A stretch of 64,000 bases of DNA from Diadema antillarum (taxonomy: Eukaryota): contig NW_027271973.1 in assembly GCF_040938485.1 (NCBI RefSeq), positions 124,001-188,000 on the forward strand. The letters are read 5' to 3'. A program made the translations under genes and the position numbers. The notes under the pieces are model-generated. The model searched no databases and was not told the DNA's origin. It was given only the letters and a program-made list of their open reading frames with translations. Shown piece after piece: positions 13,586 through 60,643 of this stretch. Numbering within the stretch: the first letter of the stretch is position 1; every line of letters begins with the position of its first letter.

Positions 13586-14527
13586 GGCTTCACCGACTGT
13601 GTTATGCATGCACAGCAGTGCACCCCGGCCCTTCTGATTTGGCGATGCCGACGCACTGGAATACTGCCAATCGTGACAAAAACAGAAAATTACGACCGGT
13701 AGGGAAATAGTAACCCGGGTTACACGGCGCTAAATACGTCCCATCACATATAACTCGAGAGTTAGTTTCGAAGTTGACACTTTCAGATAGTCCATTAAAA
13801 AGAGGAATGTCTGTTCTTTCGTCGCCGGTCAGGTCATCTGTGATACTACATAGTAAGCACGTTGTTATGTTTATCTTCTGTGTGTGTATTGTACAAACGT
13901 ATTTCGGGCGGGGGCTCTGTTGGCTCGATTCCCCCGTTGTTGACACCACACCACCACACACCATAACAGTCGGAGCGGAGCTTCCGATCACGCCATCTCT
14001 CGAGTGGGGAGTCGCACTCAAACCACACACACACACACACACGCAGGGCTTCGTCCAGTGTTATGAATGAGGGTGCGGTCATGCATAACGCCCGCGCGAT
14101 TTTTCTCCGTATTCGCCTGGTCTGCTTTGAAGACCCAACCTTCCCAAGATTTTACTCTTTGCAGGATGAGTAATCAAGCCATTTGCATCGAACGACTGAA
14201 AAGGTCTAGTGACGTAGAATCGTCAAACCTCACGGATATTGTAAACAGATTTTCCGCTATGGTATGTTGAGGTCGACTTTCATGAATCAAACAGGAACAG
14301 GGAAAATATTCGTGAAAGTCACACCAGACATACTAAAGGGTGTGTACAGTTCTGGTCGAGGTGAAGATATAGCTTTTAACGTTTTGCGAGATATTCAGAA
14401 ACCACTCTAGGAGATGTCAAAGAGCATGCAGTTCTAAGGGGTATCAAAAGTTTATTTGATGAAAATCGGTTTTGAAATGGCTGAGATATCCAAAAACAAG
14501 GTGAAACAAAGAGATCCTAATAAAAGG

Positions 14528-15278
14528 TGTGGCAGCAGTCCCCAGGTTGCTGCCATGGCAACAGTTACTCTCCCTGGCGGTATTGTTAGATGCGCGTATT
14601 GCCCTAGAATACGCTAGGCGGTATGCTTTGATTATTGTATGCGCGCAGGCGCTTCCCTTTGATCTTGTAATGGTAACCAAATAGTAGAATGATTTTATAC
14701 GCTCAGATCAGTTTCACGTCTGTATAGCTACTACAAAAAAAACATCGAAGGTACATTCAGCAACGAAATCTTTAAAGGAAAAGGAATAAAAGTCAACGAA
14801 CCATAAACAAGCTGCTTATATTATGTGATATAATGTTCACCAAAGAGGTAAGCAATTTAAATATGATTGTATTAAGTCTTATAACACAATTTATATGTGA
14901 TTCTTATGATTATAGTATTTTATATGTTTGTACATAGAGGTTAAGATTTAACAATGAATATATTGTGAAGAGTGATCGAATTAGTATTGATGTTACTCTT
15001 TAGCAAATGTGAGATTGAAAGCACTGTGATCTATAGATGTATATAATTTTAGTGATTATTGTATAAATGCATAATTTTAGTGTGAAACATTCATTAGACA
15101 TATATGAATGACAAAGCAATTTTATTGTAATTTGTGAAACTGAATTAGATCTTATTGTATATTTTACTTATACAATTTTCTTTACAGTTTCACGGGTACG
15201 ACCGTTGAGAATAAATATCTGACCGATTCCAACTACGTCCCGTTTGTCAACTGGTAATTTATCGCATGGGCAGCTACA
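14528..15278 (+). repeat. 5' LTR of the BEL element
   Basis: TGTGGCAGC...GCAGCTACA. Contains an Inr-like TCAGTT (14708-14713), a GT-AG segment (14848-15187) and AATAAA (15210-15215). Confidence 0.95.
14549..14562. promoter_or_regulatory. RFX X-box-like palindrome in LTR U3 (also at 22336-22349)
   Basis: GCTGCCATGGCAAC, a 13/14 match to the X-box palindrome GTTGCCATGGCAAC. Confidence 0.4.
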
Positions 15279-15296
15279 GTGAAACTCTTTGAACAT
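15279..15296 (+). promoter_or_regulatory. Primer-binding-site position, non-canonical (GTGAAACTCTTTGAACAT)
   Basis: Directly follows the 5' LTR and does not begin with TGG (the complement of tRNA CCA). It is complementary to the LTR's own spliced junction (see findings). Confidence 0.7.
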
Positions 15297-16104
15297 CGTT
15301 CCTGTTCAACGACAAGTCGATGATCGTCATACCAATCTGATGAGCCATTCGATGTCAACCAGCGCATTCGTCCCATCGGCGTTCACCACATCGTAAAGTC
15401 GGGTGCAACGCAGGGAATTAGGCAACTGATTGACGGCTTGAATTCGTGGTAGAGGTCTTCGAACAAGTGTCATCGGAACTGAACTTGAACTTTGAACTTC
15501 GATACATGAATGCTGATACTTCCAGTGCTGATATAGACTATAAGACAGCTCAGCCCATCATCGATTCCTCATCCGTGACTTCTGTAACAGTCTCCTGGTT
15601 GTGGATACATCGTGATCGTGCGGTATTGATATTGTAATCTCGTACAAGCTGTATTAGATATTAAAGTACAGTTTATTTCGCTCTGTAGGAAGAGAACTAG
15701 AGCAAGAAAGGAGTGCGTGATATAAATCATATGTAACTAGACTATATAGCTTTGTAAGGACAGTGAATGTGATTGAGCTATATAATTTGAACTAGATATA
15801 GAGCTATATATATAGACTTACTCGAATTCAGAAGTGAATATCGCGTATTAACTATATCCTTAGTGTTATACACGTGATATACTATCTGGACAGAATGTGA
15901 TGTGTATTTACTCTTCGTAAAGAAAAATTGTATTCGCTATAGTACAATATTTCAAATCTGTGTTACGAAAGAAAACATTTTCTTTCTCTTTGCCTAGAAA
16001 TGAAGCGAAGTAAGTGAAAATTAGACACTGTTGACATGGTTGATGTATAATAACGATCTCATAGAACTGTTGACGTTAATGCAAAGAGTGTGTTATTTGT
16101 CAAT

Positions 16105-19100
16105 ATGGAAGAGTATCAAAGTAATACTACCGATGGTCTTGAAGATAACGTAAATACAAGCACTAAGAAAGAAACAATCGATAGCATGTCTGCCAAAAAT
16201 GTGCGGCGTTCTACCCGTACAAAGAAACTTACAGAAAAGGCTAGACAGAACAAAGTAGAAGAGTTAGAAGAACAATTCTATTCAGAACATTTTGACATTC
16301 TAACAGTCTTGAAGGACTCTGAGAAAATGCTGTCCTCAGTTTCCGTAAACTGCGATGACCTGTCAGAAAGAAAATCTGACATCTCTGCTAGATTCGGTTC
16401 ACTGCAACAAGTAGCAGATGAGCTAGAAGAAGTTCTAGGGGAAAGGGATGAAGAGATAGCTAAGAATTTAGACAAGCTCTCCCCAATTGTTGTTGATATG
16501 ATTTCGAAAATCGTAACCACTGTTTCTAAGAAGCAATTCGATACTAAGGAACCATCTATCACAAGGAAGTCGACTGGTTCCAAGATCTCGAAAGCATCTA
16601 CAATCTCGTCGAAGAGGTTGGTTGTTGCAGCTGAGACTGCAGCTCTGCAAGAGAAACTTGCTGCACAAAAGCGTCAGAACGAACGTCGGAAGGAGTTAGA
16701 GCGTCTTGAGTTGGAAGAAGATGCTCGTAGGAAGGAAGCTTCTTTTAAGATGGCGCAATTACGCAGAGAACTCGAGGAAGAACGTCTAGAAGGTCAACTG
16801 AAGGCACAAGAGGCAATGATGAGAGTGTATGAAGAGGACGATACTGCATCCTCCATCACAGTGAGATCATCTAAGCAGCTGGTTGGATCATCTCAGAAGG
16901 AAAAAAGTGCAACAATCGTGAAAGAAATGTCACGGGAGAAAAGCATTCCTAGAGCTGATGATCATCCACTCCCTTCAAACCAGAAGTCGTCGAAGACAGA
17001 GGCCCTAAATCCTGAGTCACCAGTCTTCTATCCAGCTTCCTATCGCTCAGATGCCAAGGAAAGTGATGCTCTTACCGAGGCGCTTGCTCGAGCAATGACG
17101 CTTACCAGACTGCCTATTCCTGAGCCTCCTGTATTCATGGGTGATCCTCTACAGTACCCTGACTGGCTGTCAGCCTTCACAACTTTAATCGAATGTCGAG
17201 GAATCCCAGCTGGTGAAAGAATTCACTACCTCAGAAGATACCTTGGAGGATCTGCTAGAGATGCTGTCAGTGGCTTCTTCTTGCTGAGGTCAGAGAATGC
17301 CTTCGATCAGGCCAAGGCGGTGCTTGAGAAACGCTTTGGTAACCCCTTCACGATTTCAGAAGCCTTTCGATCTAAACTTGATGCATGGCCAAGAATCGCC
17401 AATAAGGACCACAACGGTCTCCAAAATCTCTCAGACTTCCTGCGACAATGTCTGGTGGCCTCTTCAGAAATCAAAGACTTGCAGATCTTGAACGACATGC
17501 GAGAGATTGGCAAGATTTGCACGAAACTTCCTGACTACATCGTACACAGGTGGAATCGCACAGTAGCGACGCTCAAGAAGAGCAGTGGACGATATCCATC
17601 CTTTGAAGAATTTGTCTTGTTTCTGACAGAGGAAGCTGACATCGCAAACGATCCTTACGTGACGTATGAGACTGCAAAGACTGGAAAAGACCGAAACCAA
17701 CACGTCAGTCAGACACAGGAAGTAAACAAGAAGCCTGCAAATCGGCAGCAAAGGATGACTTATTCGACAGCTAGCAAGCCAAATGTGGCCAAGAAAAGCT
17801 GCATCTTCTGCGAAAGACAGAACCATGGCTTAGAAGAATGCCGGGAATTCAGTAGGAAACCAGTGGAGCAGAAAAGAGAGTTTGTGAAGAAGGAAGGACT
17901 GTGCTATGGGTGTCTTAGCAAAGGCCATATGTCGAAGCAATGTCCAAAGAGGAGTGAATGCAAAATATGCAGTAAGCGTCATCCAACCTGTATGCACGAC
18001 GACACATTCAAACAGTCAACTGCAGCAGGAAAACGAGAAAACAAGGAAGAACAAGAAACGCAGTCTACCAAGGCCAAGGAGACTCCCAAAGAAAAAGAAG
18101 CAAATTGCCACAAAGCCATATCAGGTACAGACGCTTCTCTCACATCAATGGTTCTGCCGGTATACCTGTCAAGTCTGGACAGTCCCGAGAAAGAGATACT
18201 GGTCTACGCTCTGTTAGACACAATGTCAGACACAACCTTCATTGCAGATGGTGTTGGAGAAGAACTGCAGGTACCATCACATGCTGCTACATTGAGGTTG
18301 ACAACTATGACAGACAACTGTACGAATATTCCATGTAGGAGATATGAGAACCTTGTAGTTCGTGGTTTCAAGTCGGCCGAAAAGATACCACTTCCTGCTG
18401 CATACTCCAGGAACTCAATTCCACTTGATGAAGCTCACATCCCTACACCAGAGACAGCACTCCAGTGGCCTCACCTAAACAGTCTCGCAGACCAACTCGC
18501 ACCAAAGCAAGACTGCCCTGTAGGTCTGCTCATTGGATACAATTGCGCTCGAGCTCTCGCCCCAAAGAACTGTATCTCTGGAAAGAATGATGAGCCCTTC
18601 GCAGTAGAAACAGAATTAGGATGGAGCATTGTTGGTGGCTCTCAGACGTACTCTACAGACAACTTTGATGCATTCGGGCAATCATATCGTACTGTCAGCA
18701 TGAAGGTAGAAGCTCCTATTTTGACTGACAGTCAATCAGACGTGAAGTATGTCTACAAGACACAGCTAAAAGATGTCACGACTGCAGACTTCCTTCAGAT
18801 GATGGAAAAGGACTTTCATGAAATCGAAGGAACAGATGTAATGTCTCAGGATGACAAGAAATTTCTGCAGATCGTCAGAGATGGAATCAACCAAAGGGAT
18901 GATGGATACTATGAAATGCCCCTCCCCTTCAAGAATGGTGAACCCACTCTACCAAACAATCGACAAGCTGCCATGAGTCGACTCAAGGGATTGAAGAGTC
19001 AGTTCCAGAAACGACCTCAGTACAAAGAACACTACATGACATTCATGAACGAAATTCTTCAGCGAGGTGATGCAGAAAAGGTTCCTGCGGAAGAATTGTC

Positions 19101-22100
19101 AGTTGAGAACAAGTGGTACATACCACATCATGGGGTATATCACCCAAAGAAGCCGAACAAAGTGAGAGTCGTTTTCGACTGCAGTGCTCGTTACCAAGGA
19201 ACCAGTCTAAACGATCATCTCCTACAGGGCCCCGACCTCATCAACCCTCTGATTGGAGTCCTGTGTAGATTTCGCCAAGGACCCATTGCTTTCACGTGCG
19301 ATGTGGAAAAGATGTACCATCAGTTCCGCGTCATGAGACAGCATCAGAACTACCTTCGTTTCTTGTGGTGGGAAGATGGAGATCTTTCCAAGACTCCAGT
19401 GGACTATCGAATGAAGGTCCATCTCTTCGGCGCCACTTCCTCCCCAGGATGTGCCAACTTTGGACTAAAGCAAATCGCGAAGGACCATAAGGAGCTCAGC
19501 ATGGAAGCTGCTGACTTTCTTACAAGAAACTTCTACGTCGATGACGGTCTAAAGTGTGAATCTTCTGAAGCAGAAGCCATTGACCTCATTCAGAAGACAG
19601 TGAGCATGTGTGCCAAAGGTAACTTGCGTTTGCACAAGTTTGTTAGCAACAGTCCAGAAGTCACAAGCAGTATCCCTGAGTCTGAACGTGCTGCTGTTGC
19701 CAAGACTAGTCTTGAACTCGGCCAGCAAGACGCTACGCCCATTGAACGAGCACTCGGCCTACACTGGTGCATCGACTCTGATGAGTTCTGTTTCAGACTT
19801 ACCCTCAAAGACCGTCCCTTGACAAGACGTGGGATTCTTGCAACAGTTGCCTCCGTCTACGATCCTCTCGGTTTGATTGCACCCTTGGTTCTAGTTGGGA
19901 GACAGATTCTCCAGGAGATGTGTAGAAGCAAGATGGACTGGGATCATCCTGTTCCTGACGAGCTCCGTCCACGATGGGAAAAGTGGAGACAGGAGATGTT
20001 GAAACTCGACAAAGTGAAAATCCCCCGTTGCTTCCAACCACAAGACTTTGGAACTCCCAAGGAAGTTCAGCTGCACCACTTCTCAGATGCATCATTGACA
20101 GGATATGGTCAGTGTTCCTACGTGCGTCTAAAGAATGAAAGCGGTCGCGTCCATTGCTCCTTGGTTATGGCAAAGGCACGAGTATGTCCTCTAAAGCCAA
20201 CAACGATCCCAAGACTAGAACTCCAAGCAGCTACTTGTTCAGTGAAAATTGCCAATATCCTGGACAATGAACTCGATTATAGTTCTGCCACACACCACTT
20301 CTGGACCGACTCACAAGTTGTTCTTGGCTACATACACAATGAGACAAAGCGCTTCCACATGTACGTTGCCAATCGCGTCGAACGCATCCGTCAGACCTCG
20401 CGTCCAGAACAATGGAACTATGTAGCCAGTGCAGAAAATCCTGCAGATCATGCATCTAGAGGATTGACGACAGAAGAAATGCTGGCATCAAACTGGCTCA
20501 CAGGACCCAAGTTTCTTTGGGAGAATGAGATTCCTCCTCAAGATGTTACTGCAGAAGTCTCTCCGGATGATGTTGAAGTGAAATCTGCCACTGTTCACGC
20601 AACACAAGCAAAGACTTTCACGTCCTTCGAAGAAAGGCTGACTCGGTTCTCCAGCCTTGAAAATGCACTGAAAGCAGTGGCAGTAATAGTAAAGTGCTCT
20701 TACAGGAAAAGGGGTCTGAGCATTGACGAAGTAGAAGCCAAACAAGTAGCAGAGAGGAATCTCATCTGCGCAATCCAGAAGGAAGCCTTTCGTGAAGAAA
20801 GAAAGCAACTCGACAAATCAGATTCCCTAGCCACTTCGAAGTCCAACTCACTGAGACAGCTTGACCCGTTCCTAGATGACCACGATCTGCTACGGGTGGG
20901 AGGTCGGTTGAAGAAGGCAGAAATGATGTATGGTGAAAAACATCCTGTCATCCTACCAAAGGATAGCCACCTCTCTAAACTTGTCGCCTTACACTACCAT
21001 CGAAGAACGGCACATCAAGGAAGGAATCTAACCATCAATGCTATTCGCTCTGGTGGTTATTGGATCACTGGTTGCAGACGCATTGTCTCTTCTCTTATCA
21101 GCAAGTGTGTTCACTGCATCAGATTCCGAGGCAAGCCAAGAGGACAGATGAAAGCCAATCTACCACAAGACAGAGTAGAACCTTCACCTCCTTTCACATA
21201 CTGTGGACTCGACTGTTTTGGTCCCTTCACCATCAAGGAAGGGAGAAAGGAGTTGAAGCGATATGGACTCATTCTTACCTGCATGTCAATGAGGGCTGTA
21301 CACATAGAAGTGCTAGATGACATGTCTACTGACGCATTCCTCAATAGTTTGAGATGTTTCATTGCAATCCGAGGAAACGTTCGCCTCATTCGTTGTGACC
21401 AAGGATCAAATTTCATGGGTGCAAAGCACGAACTAAAAAAGGGCCTTTCTGAACTGGATGAAAATCAAATAGCTACCCAGTTACTGAAGATCAACTGTGA
21501 GTTCAGGATGAACCCGCCGGCTTCGAGCCATATGGGAGGAGTCTGGGAGCGGCAAATCAGGAATGTCAGGAACGTCCTGAATGGTATACTTGATCCGTCG
21601 GGCACTCTACTCTCAACTTCTTCTCTGCGAACGTTCCTGTATGAAGCGATGGCAATCATCAACAGTAGACCTCTGACCGTCGAAGATCTGGAGTGTCCAG
21701 ACGGCCCACTCCCATTGACTCCCAATCATGTCCTGACAATGAAATCAGGTCTCGTATTACCCCCTCCAGGACAATTCGTGAAAGAAGATCTCTATCTCCG
21801 AAAGAGGTGGAGGCGTGTCCAACACTTAGTCAACCTCTTTTGGGCACGCTGGAAGAAAGAGTATCTTCACACCCTACAAGCAAGAAAGACTTCGTCACAG
21901 CCACAGCCAAACATTGAAGCAAACGACATTGTCATCTTGCAAAACGAGAGTCTCTGCAGAACGGACTGGAGAATTGCCAAGGTCATTGAGACCATCTCCA
22001 GTGATGATGGTTTGGTTCGAAGAGCGACTCTCCTCATGGCAACTCCAGATCTAGACGAGCAAGGCAAACCACTCCACAAAAGAAGTGTAATCGAACGACC

Positions 22101-22140
22101 TGTTCACAAACTGATCGTTCTCATCAAAAGCTCAGAATAG
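16105..22140 (+). CDS. BEL/Pao Gag-Pol polyprotein (2011 aa from the first ATG): Gag, three Zn knuckles, protease, RT, RNase H, integrase
   Basis: Zn knuckles CIFCERQNHGLEEC, CYGCLSKGHMSKQC and CKICSKRHPTCMH. Protease ALLDTMSDTTFI. RT WYIPHHGV..KVRVVFDC and FYVDDG. RNase H HFSDAS, PRLELQAA, WTDSQ and NPADHASRG. Integrase HQG..CVHC, GLDCFGP, RCDQGSNF and GGVWERQIR. C-terminal RWRRVQHLVNLFWARWKKEYL. The PR-RT-RH-IN order and these motifs are typical of BEL/Pao. Confidence 0.96.
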   Translation: MEEYQSNTTDGLEDNVNTSTKKETIDSMSAKNVRRSTRTKKLTEKARQNKVEELEEQFYSEHFDILTVLKDSEKMLSSVSVNCDDLSERKSDISARFGSLQQVADELEEVLGERDEEIAKNLDKLSPIVVDMISKIVTTVSKKQFDTKEPSITRKSTGSKISKASTISSKRLVVAAETAALQEKLAAQKRQNERRKELERLELEEDARRKEASFKMAQLRRELEEERLEGQLKAQEAMMRVYEEDDTASSITVRSSKQLVGSSQKEKSATIVKEMSREKSIPRADDHPLPSNQKSSKTEALNPESPVFYPASYRSDAKESDALTEALARAMTLTRLPIPEPPVFMGDPLQYPDWLSAFTTLIECRGIPAGERIHYLRRYLGGSARDAVSGFFLLRSENAFDQAKAVLEKRFGNPFTISEAFRSKLDAWPRIANKDHNGLQNLSDFLRQCLVASSEIKDLQILNDMREIGKICTKLPDYIVHRWNRTVATLKKSSGRYPSFEEFVLFLTEEADIANDPYVTYETAKTGKDRNQHVSQTQEVNKKPANRQQRMTYSTASKPNVAKKSCIFCERQNHGLEECREFSRKPVEQKREFVKKEGLCYGCLSKGHMSKQCPKRSECKICSKRHPTCMHDDTFKQSTAAGKRENKEEQETQSTKAKETPKEKEANCHKAISGTDASLTSMVLPVYLSSLDSPEKEILVYALLDTMSDTTFIADGVGEELQVPSHAATLRLTTMTDNCTNIPCRRYENLVVRGFKSAEKIPLPAAYSRNSIPLDEAHIPTPETALQWPHLNSLADQLAPKQDCPVGLLIGYNCARALAPKNCISGKNDEPFAVETELGWSIVGGSQTYSTDNFDAFGQSYRTVSMKVEAPILTDSQSDVKYVYKTQLKDVTTADFLQMMEKDFHEIEGTDVMSQDDKKFLQIVRDGINQRDDGYYEMPLPFKNGEPTLPNNRQAAMSRLKGLKSQFQKRPQYKEHYMTFMNEILQRGDAEKVPAEELSVENKWYIPHHGVYHPKKPNKVRVVFDCSARYQGTSLNDHLLQGPDLINPLIGVLCRFRQGPIAFTCDVEKMYHQFRVMRQHQNYLRFLWWEDGDLSKTPVDYRMKVHLFGATSSPGCANFGLKQIAKDHKELSMEAADFLTRNFYVDDGLKCESSEAEAIDLIQKTVSMCAKGNLRLHKFVSNSPEVTSSIPESERAAVAKTSLELGQQDATPIERALGLHWCIDSDEFCFRLTLKDRPLTRRGILATVASVYDPLGLIAPLVLVGRQILQEMCRSKMDWDHPVPDELRPRWEKWRQEMLKLDKVKIPRCFQPQDFGTPKEVQLHHFSDASLTGYGQCSYVRLKNESGRVHCSLVMAKARVCPLKPTTIPRLELQAATCSVKIANILDNELDYSSATHHFWTDSQVVLGYIHNETKRFHMYVANRVERIRQTSRPEQWNYVASAENPADHASRGLTTEEMLASNWLTGPKFLWENEIPPQDVTAEVSPDDVEVKSATVHATQAKTFTSFEERLTRFSSLENALKAVAVIVKCSYRKRGLSIDEVEAKQVAERNLICAIQKEAFREERKQLDKSDSLATSKSNSLRQLDPFLDDHDLLRVGGRLKKAEMMYGEKHPVILPKDSHLSKLVALHYHRRTAHQGRNLTINAIRSGGYWITGCRRIVSSLISKCVHCIRFRGKPRGQMKANLPQDRVEPSPPFTYCGLDCFGPFTIKEGRKELKRYGLILTCMSMRAVHIEVLDDMSTDAFLNSLRCFIAIRGNVRLIRCDQGSNFMGAKHELKKGLSELDENQIATQLLKINCEFRMNPPASSHMGGVWERQIRNVRNVLNGILDPSGTLLSTSSLRTFLYEAMAIINSRPLTVEDLECPDGPLPLTPNHVLTMKSGLVLPPPGQFVKEDLYLRKRWRRVQHLVNLFWARWKKEYLHTLQARKTSSQPQPNIEANDIVILQNESLCRTDWRIAKVIETISSDDGLVRRATLLMATPDLDEQGKPLHKRSVIERPVHKLIVLIKSSE

Positions 22141-22314
22141 TTACTGACTATGTTATATTTTTTGAAGGTTTTCACAGTACTTTGCTGTGGCATATTGATT
22201 ATTATTGTGATATACTTCGCTATTGGTTTGGTATCAAACCTTTGTTTACACAAAATTAAATGTATAATAAAGTGATTAATGTGAAATAAAATCATAGATG
22301 ATTTTGGGTGGGAG

Positions 22315-23065
22315 TGTGGCAGCAGTCCCCAGGTTGCTGCCATGGCAACAGTTACTCTCCCTGGCGGTATTGTTAGATGCGCGTATTGCCCTAGAATACG
22401 CTAGGCGGTATGCTTTGATTATTGTATGCGCGCAGGCGCTTCCCTTTGATCTTGTAATGGTAACCAAATAGTAGAATGATTTTATACGCTCAGATCAGTT
22501 TCACGTCTGTATAGCTACTACAAAAAAAACATCGAAGGTACATTCAGCAACGAAATCTTTAAAGGAAAAGGAATAAAAGTCAACGAACCATAAACAAGCT
22601 GCTTATATTATGTGATATAATGTTCACCAAAGAGGTAAGCAATTTAAATATGATTGTATTAAGTCTTATAACACAATTTATATGTGATTCTTATGATTAT
22701 AGTATTTTATATGTTTGTACATAGAGGTTAAGATTTAACAATGAATATATTGTGAAGAGTGATCGAATTAGTATTGATGTTACTCTTTAGCAAATGTGAG
22801 ATTGAAAGCACTGTGATCTATAGATGTATATAATTTTAGTGATTATTGTATAAATGCATAATTTTAGTGTGAAACATTCATTAGACATATATGAATGACA
22901 AAGCAATTTTATTGTAATTTGTGAAACTGAATTAGATCTTATTGTATATTTTACTTATACAATTTTCTTTACAGTTTCACGGGTACGACCGTTGAGAATA
23001 AATATCTGACCGATTCCAACTACGTCCCGTTTGTCAACTGGTAATTTATCGCATGGGCAGCTACA
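22315..23065 (+). repeat. 3' LTR of the BEL element
   Basis: Direct repeat of 14528-15278 at offset 7787, preceded by the polypurine tract. Confidence 0.95.
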
Positions 23066-24744
23066 AAAGGCGTGGCCTATGTAGTCTTTTATCATTATCA
23101 CTTTTTTGGGGGGATATCTCAGCCATTTGAAAACCAATTTTCATCAAATAAACGTCGAATCCTTCTTAAGATTACATGCTCTTTCATATTTCATAAGAGG
23201 TTTCTCATTATCTCACTTAGAAATGTAAAAAACATGAATTCCCACCTCAACCAGTACTGCACAGCCAGCCCCTTTAAAGTGAATAATATAGTTCCTGTTT
23301 TCATATTTTCTCGTGAACAATGTCCATGTAACAGTCGCTTCACAATAATTTCCGCCATACGCATACGGCCTTGTGTACAATTTATTCACAAAGTTTGATT
23401 TTTTTAAATGTTTACGTGAATATTGATTTCTTTTTTAAAATACACTGGGAAATAGAATATAACTCAGGTAAATCTATAGGGGATAGACAGATATGATATG
23501 GTCTATATTTGCCTTGGACCGATTATGCTATCATGGTGTAGATTAACAGTGGACATAGGCCTTAAGAGGCAAGTTGAAGAATCCATTGAGATTGATGAAT
23601 ATGCCTATAACTGACTGGAGTAATGGAGCGGTGTATCTCCCGATATAAACGGATAAGAAAGTTACAGATGAATAATCTTACTTGAATATCAATCTTTGTG
23701 CGATAGAGGAATGAAAAGTCTATAGTGACAGACAGACATGTTCCGTTAGAAAAGAGAGCTCAGTCTTTTTACATTGGCGATTTTGTTTAATATTCTTCCT
23801 GTGGATATTGGTGCTTTCAAGGTAGAACTGAATCAAATTATCCCATAATATCTCAGTGTACAAAAAGTTACTTTACTTTTGTAAAAAGAGATCACGATGC
23901 AATATTACATGTTGAAACTAAAATTGTTTTGCTCTCTTAGACCTCATTAGAGCGTGTGGTTTTGTGGTGGGGGGGGGGGTCTGGCAGTCTGTGGGGAATG
24001 TTAACGAAGATGCTCTAAGAAACTATACTTTTTAAGTGTCTTATTACAGCCAATAATATCTTCATTGCATTATATTCTCAGTGATGGTAATAAATATGAT
24101 GCTGTCAGTGATGTGTAATTCGATATAAATAGATTCATGCAGTGATATATGGATATTTTATATGCATGTGTTTCCTTTTTTATTTTTGAAGGTTTTATCT
24201 GTTTTGGTAGGGTTTCAGGGCAATAATATTTCTGTTGTCATACACGGGACCAAGCATTCATATTCTCTGGTGCCGGAAATTCAACAGACTTTGACATTTT
24301 TTTATTCATACAAAACCTATACATTGTTTCTTGTTGTTTCGTTTTCGTTTTGTCCTTATGTGCACGCGCTTTACTTCGGACAGAAAAAAAAAATGATTTT
24401 ACTATAACCATGGAGCTACTAACAGTAGCTCCATGCTATAACACAGAGGTTTCCATAGCTGTTGGAGCTATAAAGGGTGTCAGTGTATACTATCACAATC
24501 ATACTTGTCTACGAGTGTTATATACATCATGCAACAATATATAGCTTGTGGTATATCTAGGAAAACTATCAACGTGTGTGGTTGTTTTCTTACATGATTT
24601 ATTGTAATCATTTCGGCCGCGGAAACAATAATCGTAAATGCATGGTCCAATTCAGTGAAATGAAGAGTGTGCACGTTGAAACACTTGATTCAGTTATATA
24701 GGGTATGACATCAAGTTAACAATAATTGTGACGTAATGATACCA

Positions 24745-54900: not shown

Positions 54901-55065
54901 TACTAGGACCCAATTCACTTTGCTTAATAATTCCGCTCATGCTGCGAATGGAAATACAGTTGATAGTTGCTGTATTACATCGCGTAAAAACGCAAGTTCA
55001 CCTCTGTTTCATAAGACTCGATTTGTTGGAATTAAAGTGAAATCCGTGGTCTACATCTGATCATC

Positions 55066-55622
55066 ATGCCTTCTGCTAATCAGTTCGCCGTATTGTTCCA
55101 GGCGGCTTTGGCCATCTGCTGTATAGTCATAGCAGGCTATGTAGCGCTCCCTTACAAACTTGGCTTCCCACCGAACCTCTCCGGAGGCGATCGTCTGGTC
55201 TTCGCATTCCGCTGCCTGTCGTTCTCTGCTCTCCCTCTATTCGTCTGTGTGAACAGAGTAGGCTCTCAGCGATTTGCCAACATGGAACACTAGGTGCTCA
55301 TCCCACGGCCCCTGTGGCCCCGTCCATGACGACCTTCGTGACCTATCAGAGGATCCTCCAGAATACCGTGGAGCAAACCCTCCTGCATGTCTTAGCTGTC
55401 TTGGGGATGGCCTCTTGTCTGGAGGTTGACCGGCTGCAGTTGGTACCGCTCCTCGTCTTGCTCTTTGTTGTTGGTCGCACCTTTTTCTTCGTGGGATACG
55501 TCGTCAAACCGATTCTCCGAGGATTTGGTTTCGCCTTGACCTCCATCCCTACCATGCTCGGGATACTGTACTCCGTGCACAACGTCGCCTGGCAAGTCTA
55601 CAACGGCCAGAAGACGCCATAA
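55066..55622 (+). pseudogene. TMEM79/MAPEG-like paralog 1 with a single 1-nt frameshift (pseudogene or assembly error)
   Basis: Collinear with 60086-60643, but reads ATGGAACAC where the paralog reads ATGGAAACAC (about 55286), giving TAG at 55291-55293. No other lesion seen. Confidence 0.7.
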
Positions 55623-59684: not shown

Positions 59685-60085
59685 TAAATTAATTCTACAA
59701 AGTCCGCGCACACCACAAACAAGTCCAAAGTTCATATAAGATAGGCCTGGCACGTCATCTTTAGTGCATAATGGTTCGCTCTTTCCAGGGTCTTTTGTGT
59801 TTAATGGTCACTGAGGGTTAACATCACTCAAATATTGTCAGCAGATTATTCAACCAGGAATTTTATCTCCAATCTGAATAGATCTCATTTGCTCACCCTC
59901 GCAGCTGTACCGTACTATAGGACCCAATTCACTTTGCTTAATTCATTCCGCTCATGCTGCGAATGGAAGTAGTTGATTTAGTTGCTGTATTGGGGTACAT
60001 CGAGTAAAAACGCAAATCCAGCTGTGTTTGAAAGACTATATATTTTCACTTGTTGGAATTAAAGTGAAATCAGCGGTCTATCGCC

Positions 60086-60643
60086 ATGCCTTCTGCGAAT
60101 CAGTTATTCGTCTATTTCCAGGTGTCCATGGCATTATGCTGTATAGTCATCACAGGCTATGTAGCGCTCCCTTACAAACTTGGCTTCCCACCGAACCTCT
60201 CCGGAGGCGATCGTCTGGTTTTCGCATTCCGTTGCCTGTCGTTCTCCGCTCTCCCTCTACTCTACTGTGTGAACAAAGTAGGCTCTCAGCGATTCGTCAA
60301 CATGGAAACACTAGGTGCCCATCCCACGGCCCCTGTGGCCTCGTCCATGACAACCTTCGTGACCTACCAGAGGATCCTCCAGAATACCCTGGAGCAAACA
60401 CTCGGGCATGTCTTAGCTGTCCTGGGGATGGCCTCTTGTCTGGAGGTTGACCGGCTGCAGTTGGTACCGCTCCTCGTCTTCCTTTTTGTCGTTGGTCGGA
60501 CCTTTTTCTTTGTGGGATACATCGTCAAACCGATTCTCCGAGGATTTGGTTTCGCCCTAACCTTCATCTCTACCACGCTCGGGATATTGTACTCCGTGCA
60601 CAACGTCGCCTGGCAAGTCTACAACGGCCAGAAGACGCCATAA
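60086..60643 (+). CDS. TMEM79 (mattrin)-like / MAPEG-superfamily membrane protein, 185 aa, intronless
   Basis: Several hydrophobic helices. RLVFAFRC, QNTLEQ and LQLVPLLVFLFVVGRTFFFVGY..PILRGFGFALTF resemble TMEM79 RLIYTLRC and LKLLPLLTGLFAVSRLIYW..RSFRGFGYGLTF (recalled from memory). Orthology not established. Confidence 0.75.
   Translation: MPSANQLFVYFQVSMALCCIVITGYVALPYKLGFPPNLSGGDRLVFAFRCLSFSALPLLYCVNKVGSQRFVNMETLGAHPTAPVASSMTTFVTYQRILQNTLEQTLGHVLAVLGMASCLEVDRLQLVPLLVFLFVVGRTFFFVGYIVKPILRGFGFALTFISTTLGILYSVHNVAWQVYNGQKTP

What the first reader, a model, noticed from the sequence alone, without database searches (positions are those of the whole stretch)
14833..15296. Candidate splicing-dependent self-priming: removing the LTR intron creates the exact complement of the BEL primer-binding site
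Seen in sequence: the bases after the 5' LTR are GTGAAACTCTTTGAACAT (15279-15296), with no TGG start, so they do not look like a tRNA PBS. Joining the donor at 14847|14848 (CAAAGAG|GTAAGC) to the acceptor at 15187|15188 (TTTCTTTACAG|TTTCAC) gives ATGTT-CAC-CAAAGAG|TTTCAC. This is a perfect 13-nt reverse complement of 15279-15291, extending to 18 bp with one 3-nt bulge, and its 3' end abuts the LTR boundary exactly. Unspliced RNA gives only 8 bp (AGTTTCAC). The five extra contiguous bases supplied by the upstream exon have roughly a 1-in-1000 chance of matching. Established knowledge: Tf1/sushi-group Ty3 elements self-prime by annealing their RNA 5' end to the PBS, followed by cleavage by RT RNase H. 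Inference: here the primer is built by the spliceosome, either in cis (cleavage after C15193) or in trans from a short spliced LTR transcript. In the cis model, strong-stop DNA covers only 15194-15278 and the intron is recovered from an unspliced 3' LTR, which would explain why it persists. I am not aware of this being described for BEL/Pao, but I could not search the literature.
Basis: partly seen in the sequence, partly recalled or inferred. Interest (0 to 1): 0.92.

Follow-up and report, generated by a model that had tools for sequence, protein, structure and literature searches.

The report
Spliced LTR RNA primes reverse transcription
A young BEL/Pao retrotransposon in a sea-urchin genome has an intron inside its LTR, and removing it creates the exact complement of the primer-binding site, so the element most likely starts reverse transcription with a spliced piece of its own RNA rather than a host tRNA, a design shared by relatives in fish, starfish, urchins and a snail.

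Summary
The element (LTRs 14528-15278 and 22315-23065, identical; TSD AAAGG; Pao-type polyprotein) has no tRNA-type PBS. Joining 14847 to 15188 gives a 13-nt perfect complement of 15279-15291, or 18 nt with a 3-nt bulge, ending exactly at the LTR boundary.

1. The genome holds LTR copies that lack exactly 14848-15187, so this GT..AG segment is probably spliced in vivo and spliced RNA is reverse-transcribed.
2. Some copies look like by-products of this priming. One recent copy with intron-containing LTRs has a PBS carrying an extra GTG, which makes it the perfect 21-nt complement of the spliced junction. Three aberrant insertions, two of them with target-site duplications, join U5 to the complement of the spliced junction.
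3. Nine relatives (three more urchin or urchin-like elements, Patiria, Littorina, Carassius, Amia, two metagenomic) have an LTR intron at the same place. In all ten, junction and PBS pair over 10 anchored positions, with compensatory changes, including all four Watson-Crick pair types at one exon-1 position. The unspliced acceptor mismatches in all ten.

No RNA data were available. The transcription start, the cleavage step and cis versus trans priming remain inferred. I found no description of this in the literature I could search. Other first readers of this scan flagged similar BEL elements elsewhere in this genome.

The parts
14523..14527 (+). Left target-site duplication AAAGG (right copy at 23066-23070)
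14528..15278 (+). 5' LTR, 751 bp, TG..CA, identical to the 3' LTR
14833..14847 (+). End of LTR exon 1, the 5' part of the proposed primer. ATGTT forms the distal arm, CAC the bulge, and CAAAGAG the proximal arm up to the donor.
14848..15187 (+). LTR intron, 340 nt, GTAAGC...TTTCTTTACAG, 77% A+T. It is precisely absent from six LTRs elsewhere in the genome.
15188..15193 (+). First 6 nt of LTR exon 2 (TTTCAC), the 3' end of the proposed primer. C15193 pairs with G15279. The inferred cut is between C15193 and G15194.
   Evidence: inference from the LTR boundary
15194..15278 (+). Template of the inferred 85-nt minus-strand strong-stop DNA. It contains AATAAA at 15210-15215, the functional R (15194 to the poly(A) site) and U5.
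   Evidence: inference
15279..15296 (+). Primer-binding site GTGAAACTCTTTGAACAT, complementary to the spliced exon1-exon2 junction and to no tRNA 3' end
16090..22140 (+). Single open gag-pol reading frame (2016 aa): DUF1759 gag region, Peptidase_A17 (Pao), Integrase_H2C2, DUF5641
22306..22314 (+). Polypurine tract GGGTGGGAG abutting the 3' LTR
22315..23065 (+). 3' LTR carrying the same intron (22635-22974). In the model it is the source of U3, exon 1 and the intron for both progeny LTRs.

Best explanation
This is a BEL/Pao LTR retrotransposon that primes its own minus-strand DNA synthesis with a piece of its own spliced RNA. I mark each step as shown or inferred.

1. RNA polymerase II starts in the 5' LTR somewhere upstream of 14833. 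The start site is inferred and unknown.
2. The spliceosome removes 14848-15187 and joins ...AUGUUCACCAAAGAG to UUUCACGGG.... Intron-less retro-copies show this indirectly.
3. The junction folds back over 85 nt onto the PBS at 15279-15296, forming 13 bp, a 3-nt bulge and 5 bp. This is computed and supported by covariation.
4. The RNA is cut between C15193 and G15194, giving a 3'-OH paired to the first base after the LTR. This is inferred from the LTR boundary. By analogy with Tf1 the cut would be made by the element's RNase H.
5. RT extends this end and makes an 85-nt strong-stop DNA (15278 back to 15194).
6. That DNA transfers to the short R (15194 to the poly(A) site after AATAAA 15210-15215) at the 3' end of the RNA. 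RT then copies the 3' LTR's exon-2 start, intron, exon 1 and U3. Both new LTRs therefore inherit the splicing state of the RNA's 3' LTR. The intron survives if that copy is unspliced and is lost from both LTRs if it was spliced.
7. The plus strand, primed at GGGTGGGAG, copies the LTR and then part of the RNA primer, which regenerates the PBS.
For: (a) The complementarity ends exactly at the LTR/PBS boundary and is not chance.

(b) The segment is a real intron. Six LTRs in the genome carry TGTTCACCAAAGAG directly joined to TTTCACGG, and 31 keep the donor (sequences). Where the second LTR of an element was seen (C480, C95), it was intron-less as well. The same 340-nt skip with GT..AG ends appears in contigs of three public runs of unknown kind.

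(c) The PBS can be inherited from the primer. Twelve places carry the 18-nt PBS. The element at C316 has 100% identical intron-containing LTRs and TSD TACCC, and its PBS reads GTGAAACTCTTTG-GTG-AACAT. That is the perfect 21-nt complement of the spliced junction, bulge included.

(d) Three aberrant insertions preserve the joint. C1728 (TSD TTGGG) is a full intron-containing LTR, then GTGAAA, then the reverse complement of exon 1 back to LTR position 1. C95 (TSD CCAAG) has exon 1 joined to TTTCAC and then to the reverse complement of the last 19 nt of U5. C574, from a diverged subfamily, has the same joint but no evident TSD.

(e) Ten related elements were compared: this one, Lytechinus, S. purpuratus, Patiria, Littorina, Carassius, Amia and three metagenomic contigs, one of them urchin-like, at 50-83% protein identity to this one. 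All have a GT..YAG intron of 157-1492 nt at the equivalent LTR position, and AATAAA 19-56 nt after the acceptor. Anchored positions 1-10 of junction versus PBS are paired in 10/10. Exon-1 position -3 is G:C in 10/10, whereas the intron's -3 pyrimidine mismatches in 10/10. Exon-1 position -4 shows A:T, C:G, G:C and T:A and is always paired. Exon 2 covaries with the PBS as well (TTTCAC/GTGAAA, TTTTAC/GTAAAA, TTATAC/GTATAA, TTCTCAC/GTGAGAA). In nine of the ten elements the junction matches its own PBS better than any other element's; the Lytechinus row fails the strict test because of its terminal G.U pair.

(f) The minimum-free-energy fold of the spliced leader contains the junction-PBS helix in 7 of 10 elements.
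Against: There is no direct RNA evidence. The only runs found are of unknown kind and are probably DNA, so the joint seen there may simply reflect the intron-less genomic copies. The transcription start is unknown, so I cannot say whether the primer is the extreme 5' end of the RNA, as in Tf1, or lies at the end of a longer first exon. The cut after C15193 is inferred, not observed. The C1728 and C95 joints could also arise through the 7-nt CAAAGAG/CTCTTTG microhomology without a spliced primer. Only the C316 PBS variant and the covariation specifically require the spliced junction. It is unexplained how the 5' copy of the intron would be spliced while the 3' copy in the same RNA is retained. 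It is also unexplained why intron-less copies, which carry the primer sequence ready-made, have not replaced the intron-containing ones. In Lytechinus the primer's last base would form a G.U pair. In 3 of 10 elements the MFE fold prefers other pairings.
Confidence: 0.8

Rival explanations
1. Unspliced, Tf1-like self-priming. The 8-nt AGTTTCAC serves as primer and splicing is irrelevant. It would be either the copy at 14710, which sits in a TCAGTT initiator-like motif and could be the RNA 5' end, or the copy at the unspliced acceptor (15186).
For: AGTTTCAC occurs twice in the LTR and pairs with PBS positions 1-8. A contiguous anchored 8-mer is itself uncommon in shuffles, about 1%. The 10-mer CAGTTTCACG is identical at both sites.
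Against: In all ten relatives the intron's -3 pyrimidine mismatches the PBS, while the exon-1 base pairs. Position -4 covaries through four pair types only in the spliced register. The C316 PBS variant carries the complement of exon-1 bases 14836-14840, not of intron bases. The upstream 14710 copy has no counterpart in the Lytechinus, S. purpuratus, Littorina, Patiria or Carassius LTRs.
Confidence: 0.07
2. A host RNA is the primer, and the match to the LTR junction is incidental. The candidate would be a tRNA, a tRNA fragment cut in the anticodon loop as for copia, or another small RNA ending in ...GAGUUUCAC.
For: The first 9-10 nt of the PBS (GTGAAA(A)CTC) are similar in several hosts, as might be expected for a conserved host primer. 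ICTV describes Belpaoviridae as tRNA-primed (PMC8742986).
Against: The PBS has no TGG. Genome matches to the 13-mer outside the element are at chance level: 37 against 36 for the control, and 26 against 37. None of the 30 fetched places lies in a tRNA, and Rfam finds nothing in the LTR or leader. The PBS differs between elements (GTATAA.., GTGAGAA.., GTAAAA..), and each time the element's own exon 2 and exon-1 end change to match. A common host RNA cannot explain that. I did not scan the host's full tRNA set.
Confidence: 0.04
3. The junction-PBS pairing is real and selected but serves another purpose, and minus-strand priming happens by an unknown route. Possible purposes are control of the 5' LTR poly(A) site, packaging, dimerisation, or marking spliced RNA.
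For: The helix encloses the AATAAA signal and poly(A) region of the 5' LTR, a geometry that could occlude polyadenylation. There is no biochemical proof of priming.
Against: In all ten elements the pairing begins at the very first base after the LTR, the defining position of a minus-strand primer. The C316 PBS conversion and the joints of U5 to the junction complement are what copying of a primer produces. No other candidate PBS or primer exists.
Confidence: 0.07
4. The 340-bp segment is an insertion, not an intron. The short LTRs are ancestral and the complementarity belongs only to them.
For: Short and long LTR forms coexist. The 2-nt AG ambiguity at the joint could be read as a tiny duplication.
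Against: Relatives whose LTRs otherwise do not align carry an intervening segment at the same junction. Its length ranges from 157 to 1492 nt, and it always has a GT donor, a pyrimidine tract and YAG. Independent insertions would not do this. Intron-containing copies are the majority and include the youngest elements, with identical LTRs.
Confidence: 0.02

Closest known systems
Tf1/sushi-group self-priming (Ty3/gypsy; S. pombe Tf1)
   Same: There is no tRNA. The element's own RNA upstream in the LTR folds back onto the PBS. A cut in that RNA, made by RNase H in Tf1, creates the primer. Strong-stop DNA is short, and the bases of the primer are regained from the 3' LTR. This description of Tf1 is from my own knowledge; only passing mentions of self-priming turned up.
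   Different: The complementary sequence does not exist in the DNA or the primary transcript; it is assembled across an exon-exon junction. The duplex is 13+5 bp with a bulge, against 11 bp in Tf1. The element belongs to BEL/Pao, not Ty3/gypsy. Whether the primer is the extreme 5' end of the RNA is unknown.
Canonical Belpaoviridae (BEL/Pao) replication as summarised by ICTV
   Same: The polyprotein domains, TG..CA LTRs, 5-bp TSD and PPT match.
   Different: [quoted passage not shown] This element and nine relatives have no such PBS.
Drosophila copia priming by an internal fragment of initiator tRNA-Met
   Same: The PBS does not begin with TGG, and the primer 3' end is made by cleaving a longer RNA (own knowledge).
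   Different: In copia the primer is a host tRNA. Here it is element-encoded and covaries with the element's PBS.
Inheritance of the PBS from the primer in retroviruses (plus-strand strong-stop DNA copies the primer's 3' 18 nt)
   Same: The C316 copy, whose PBS has gained the 3 bulged bases of the junction, is the analogue of a retroviral PBS being rewritten to match the tRNA that was used (the retroviral rule is from my own knowledge).
   Different: The copied primer is a spliced segment of the element's own RNA.
Splice donors inside R of retroviral LTRs (HTLV-1/BLV, foamy viruses)
   Same: A functional 5' splice site lies within the LTR (own knowledge; an HTLV-1 splice-site paper appeared).
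   Different: In those viruses the acceptor lies far downstream and splicing makes subgenomic mRNAs. Here donor and acceptor are both inside the LTR, and the product is the primer.

Membership tests
BEL/Pao (Belpaoviridae) LTR retrotransposon | Pao-type aspartic peptidase (Peptidase_A17) within a gag-pol polyprotein with integrase | tested here: met
   PF05380 E 4.8e-49 (aa 1245-1408), DUF1759 (349-489), Integrase_H2C2 (1627-1680), DUF5641 (1905-2011). In one search the closest proteins all carry PF05380.
BEL/Pao (Belpaoviridae) LTR retrotransposon | LTRs ending TG..CA, short target-site duplication, PPT before the 3' LTR | tested here: met
   751-bp identical LTRs and TSD AAAGG. Nine other copies have matching 5-bp TSDs. 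The PPT is GGGTGGGAG.
BEL/Pao (Belpaoviridae) LTR retrotransposon | [quoted passage not shown] | tested here: not met
   There is no TGG. Matches to the PBS complement outside the element are at chance level and not in tRNAs. The host's full tRNA set was not scanned.
Self-priming LTR retrotransposon (Tf1-like mechanism) | PBS complementary to the element's own RNA from the 5' LTR, anchored at the first base after the LTR | tested here: met
   The feature is met only for the spliced RNA: 13 nt against 8 nt for the unspliced.
Self-priming LTR retrotransposon (Tf1-like mechanism) | The complementary bases are the first bases of the transcript | not testable with these tools
   The transcription start is unknown and no raw RNA reads were available. 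TATA-like motifs 38-62 nt upstream of the donor hint at a short first exon, which is inference only.
Self-priming LTR retrotransposon (Tf1-like mechanism) | Endonucleolytic cut of the RNA creates the primer 3'-OH | not testable with these tools
   The position is inferred from the LTR end. The primer's last base pairs with the first base after the LTR in 10/10 elements, and the next RNA base is G in 9/10.
Self-priming LTR retrotransposon (Tf1-like mechanism) | Membership of the Tf1/sushi clade of Ty3/gypsy | tested here: not met
   The polyprotein is Pao-type. The element works like Tf1 but is not a member of that clade.
Spliceosomal intron | GT donor, pyrimidine tract and YAG acceptor, conserved in position among relatives | tested here: met
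   ten of ten elements, with introns of 157-1492 nt and higher A+T than the flanks.
Spliceosomal intron | Precise removal in vivo | tested here: inconclusive
   Removal is shown indirectly. Six genomic LTRs lack exactly the segment, and the joint is seen in contigs of three runs of unknown kind. No run on record as RNA was found.

The most novel reading that the evidence does not exclude
A whole clade of BEL/Pao retrotransposons, found in teleost and holostean fish, sea urchins, a sea star and a gastropod, uses the host spliceosome to assemble its reverse-transcription primer. The LTR intron splits the primer sequence, so only RNA that has been spliced at its 5' end can start DNA synthesis. 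The intron itself is passed on through the unspliced 3' LTR. Splicing would then act as an obligatory licensing step for retrotransposition, and the family-level textbook statement that Belpaoviridae are tRNA-primed would be wrong for this clade.
Probability: 0.7. Interest if true: 0.92.

Novelty: new variant of a known kind. Interest (0 to 1): 0.88.

Why it matters
Every LTR retroelement needs a primer for minus-strand synthesis. The known solutions are a host tRNA 3' end, a tRNA fragment (copia), and the element's own unspliced 5' end (Tf1 group). A primer that exists only after pre-mRNA splicing would be a fourth solution, and the first direct mechanistic dependence of reverse-transcription initiation on the spliceosome.

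It would explain why an intron is conserved inside the LTRs of a widespread animal retrotransposon clade. It also predicts how intron-less copies arise.

There is a practical consequence for annotation. Pipelines that classify LTR elements by tRNA-PBS matching will miss or misjudge these elements. LTR aligners will see two length classes of one family.

The genomic by-products found here (a rewritten PBS, snap-back insertions) give a sequence-only way to test priming models in other families.

Tried and rejected
RNA evidence. Their size and contig count look like low-coverage DNA. They show the 340-nt GT..AG skip at depths comparable to the intron-containing form, but this cannot be called RNA splicing, and contig depths are unreliable.

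Host tRNA. The window has no tRNA. Two genome-wide pattern counts for the primer 13-mer outside element contexts were at control level. ARAGORN on 30 such places found nothing overlapping them. A full tRNA catalogue of the 1.75-Gb genome was not possible.

Rfam gave no meaningful match on 14300-16200.

Other BEL families of the same genome. I used relatives from public assemblies instead.

Two relatives gave no clean test. The Priapulus locus L081 is full of N runs. L083 has a rearranged LTR (see the notes in passing).

Transcription start. An alignment of the region upstream of the donor in four urchin elements shows only a weakly conserved T/A-rich motif followed by GCTGC. I did not build on it.

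The L036 insertion ends exactly at the donor G, then snaps back by a 4-nt microhomology. I considered it as evidence for a free exon-1 intermediate but rejected it as too weak.

Literature. Seven full-text searches (two further calls failed on term format) and five papers read gave no description of self-priming or LTR introns in BEL/Pao. One look-up (PMC353769) is not held. Subscription papers, for example Frame et al. 2001 on Suzu, could not be read, so prior description cannot be excluded.

Full report
**What is there**

The finding lies in the 5' LTR and leader of a complete LTR retrotransposon. The LTRs are 14528-15278 and 22315-23065. They are 751 bp, 100% identical, TG..CA, and flanked by the 5-bp duplication AAAGG. 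GGGTGGGAG precedes the 3' LTR. A single 2016-codon frame (16090-22140) carries DUF1759, Peptidase_A17 (Pao), an integrase zinc-binding domain and DUF5641, so the element is BEL/Pao. The best protein match, at 99%, is annotated Diadema setosum, so the host is a diadematid sea urchin.

**The observation**

The PBS position reads GTGAAACTCTTTGAACAT and has no TGG. Joining CAAAGAG|GTAAGC (14847|14848) to TTTCTTTACAG|TTTCAC (15187|15188) gives ATGTT-CAC-CAAAGAG-TTTCAC. This is 13 contiguous complementary bases, ending at the first base after the LTR, plus 5 more after a 3-nt bulge. Unspliced sequence gives 8 nt (AGTTTCAC), at 15186 and also at 14710. In 2000 dinucleotide-preserving shuffles of the LTR, allowing any GT..AG pair, an anchored match of 13 never occurred.

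**The segment behaves as an intron**

A search of the element's own genome with LTR plus leader found many full copies at 97-100% identity. It also found LTRs in which query bases 1-320 are joined directly to 659 onward, that is, exactly without 14848-15187. Pattern counts give 31 LTRs with the intact donor and 6 with the spliced junction followed by normal exon 2. For the two intron-less elements whose second LTR was seen (C480 and C95), both LTRs are intron-less. The 85-89% subfamily also has intron-less LTRs. Contigs of three public runs show the same 340-nt skip with GT..AG ends. The runs are of unknown kind and probably DNA, so this adds nothing beyond the genomic copies.

**Copies that look like by-products of the priming reaction**

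Twelve places carry the normal 18-nt PBS. Four carry CTACA-GTGAAACTCTTTG-GTG-AACAT.

- **C316.** This is an otherwise normal element. Its two 743-bp LTRs contain the intron and are 100% identical, and its TSD is TACCC. Its PBS has the extra GTG and then continues into the normal leader. The result is the perfect 21-nt complement of the spliced junction, including the three bases that normally bulge. In retroviruses the plus strand copies the primer, so a progeny PBS can take the primer's sequence. By that rule, the primer of this insertion contained exon-1 bases joined to TTTCAC.
- **C1728 (TSD TTGGG).** It is a full intron-containing LTR, then GTGAAA, then the reverse complement of exon 1 and U3 back to LTR position 1. 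This is what is expected if plus-strand strong-stop DNA ran on into the spliced primer and snapped back.
- **C95 (TSD CCAAG).** It has exon 1 joined to TTTCAC, then the reverse complement of the last 19 nt of U5, then internal sequence and an intron-less 3' LTR.
- **C574.** It belongs to the diverged subfamily. It is a complex snap-back with the same joint and no evident TSD.

The C1728 and C95 joints could also form through the 7-nt CAAAGAG/CTCTTTG overlap alone. The C316 variant cannot.

**Comparative test**

I fetched relatives through their proteins and the contigs that encode them.

| Locus | Source | Protein identity to this element |
|---|---|---|
| L073 | Lytechinus variegatus | 81% |
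| L075 | urchin-like metagenomic contig | 83% |
| L074 | S. purpuratus | 69% |
| L076 | Littorina saxatilis | 64% |
| L077 | marine metagenomic contig | 64% |
| L080 | metagenomic contig | 57% |
| L079 | Carassius gibelio | 52% |
| L082 | Amia ocellicauda | 51% |
| L078 | Patiria miniata | 50% |

Where both LTRs were present, I fixed their ends from LTR pairs and TSDs. All nine, like the Diadema element, have the following features:

- a GT..YAG intron of 157-1492 nt inside the LTR;
- an exon 1 ending in GAG or GAA;
- an exon 2 beginning TT..AC (TT..AT in Lytechinus);
- AATAAA 19-56 nt after the acceptor;
- 89-244 nt from the acceptor to the LTR end.

In every case the spliced junction is complementary to the bases that follow the LTR. 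Anchored positions 1-10 are paired in 10 of 10 elements, with one terminal G.U in Lytechinus.

The pairing covaries. Exon 2 and PBS change together: TTTCAC/GTGAAA, TTTTCAC/GTGAAAA, TTTTAC/GTAAAA, TTATAC/GTATAA and TTCTCAC/GTGAGAA. The fourth base from the end of exon 1 pairs as A:T, C:G, G:C or T:A in different elements. The third base from the end is G:C in all ten, whereas the intron's own -3 pyrimidine mismatches in all ten. In nine of the ten, the junction matches its own PBS better than any other element's under strict anchored matching. Lytechinus fails only because of its terminal G.U. Carassius, Amia and Diadema share the architecture of a distal 5-bp arm, a 3-nt bulge and a 12-13-bp arm. 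The MFE fold of the spliced leader contains the helix in 7 of 10.

**Mechanism**

The steps are given under Best explanation, each marked as shown or inferred. In short, the 5' LTR transcript is spliced and the junction folds back 85 nt onto the PBS. A cut between C15193 and G15194 then leaves a 3'-OH opposite the first base after the LTR. RT makes an 85-nt strong-stop DNA, which transfers through the short R (15194 to the poly(A) site). RT then copies the 3' LTR of the RNA, including its intron if that copy is unspliced.

The model accounts for four observations:

- the U5 end falls at 15278;
- both LTRs of an element share one intron state;
- intron-less elements arise at a modest rate;
- the PBS is occasionally rewritten to the junction's exact complement.

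Four things are not shown. These are the RNA junction itself, the start site, the nuclease, and whether the primer acts in cis or comes from a second, spliced RNA. How the 3' intron escapes splicing is also unexplained.

**Rivals**

- A host tRNA or small RNA is very unlikely. There is no TGG, genome matches to the primer 13-mer are at chance level, there are no tRNAs at those matches, and Rfam finds nothing. Above all, the PBS and the element's own exons change together.
- Priming by the unspliced 8-mer is contradicted by the -3 mismatch, the -4 covariation and the C316 variant. The 14710 copy is not conserved in other species.
- A purely structural role for the helix does not explain the exact anchoring or the C316 and snap-back copies.

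**What is known**

The ICTV profile of Belpaoviridae states that replication is primed by a host tRNA, through a PBS complementary to tRNA-Arg or tRNA-Gly (PMC8742986). Surveys of BEL/Pao elements that I could read do not discuss the PBS, introns or self-priming. Full-text searches for LTR introns or self-priming in this group found nothing relevant. The closest known mechanism is Tf1-type self-priming. The new element is that the primer sequence is split by an intron and exists only after splicing. Other first readers of this scan noted similar geometry in other BEL elements of this genome. I did not test those loci.

**Limits**

A functional assay that would alter the element is referred.

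Noticed in passing
window 14709-14718 and 15184-15193: The 10-mer CAGTTTCACG occurs twice in the LTR. The upstream copy lies in a TCAGTT initiator-like motif. It is kept in the diverged Diadema subfamily but has no counterpart in the LTRs of other species. Its role is unknown; it could be an alternative start, an alternative acceptor or chance.
   Followed up: partly
L083:2779-3201 and L083:10777-11022 (ENA assembly contig, relative at 53% identity): Both LTRs of this relative end in a roughly 400-bp near-perfect palindrome. A primer-like TGTGTTTCTAC is joined to the reverse complement of U5, and the PBS (AGTAGAAACACA) is its complement. It looks like a snap-back priming product that became part of a replicating element. 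The TSD is GCAAC.
   Followed up: partly
L036:986-1340 (G000 C384): This insertion consists of LTR bases 1-320, ending exactly at the donor G, followed by the reverse complement of LTR 44-1. It has TSD CTCGG and a 4-nt AGAG/CTCT microhomology at the turn.
   Followed up: partly
L038:1189-2414 (G000 C176): One copy has about 1.2 kb of foreign DNA inserted inside the LTR intron, with a duplicated AAGTCTTATAAAC-like stretch at the joints.
   Followed up: no
window 14400-14533: The element sits next to or inside a very high-copy short repeat. Contig depths there are in the millions, against about 100-300 for the element, and many loose ends are A-rich, which suggests a SINE-like family.
   Followed up: no
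L004/L015 vs L005/L016, and L008/L027 vs L009/L019: Pairs of copies on different contigs share the same TSD (ATCTC, AATGG) and flanks. They are probably the same insertion assembled twice as haplotigs, so copy counts from the assembly are inflated.
   Followed up: partly
window 55060-55585 and 60080-60606: Two direct repeats of about 530 bp, 88-93% identical and 5.0 kb apart, suggest an older LTR-type element without a long ORF.
   Followed up: no
window 6698-7893: A tandem array with a period of about 320-338 bp (4 copies, 65-93% identity).
   Followed up: no
L076:2589-3687 (Littorina): The exon-1 end and donor are duplicated about 55 nt apart (GGCCAACGAG|GTAATG and GGCCAACGAA|GTATGT), giving two candidate donors.
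   Followed up: no
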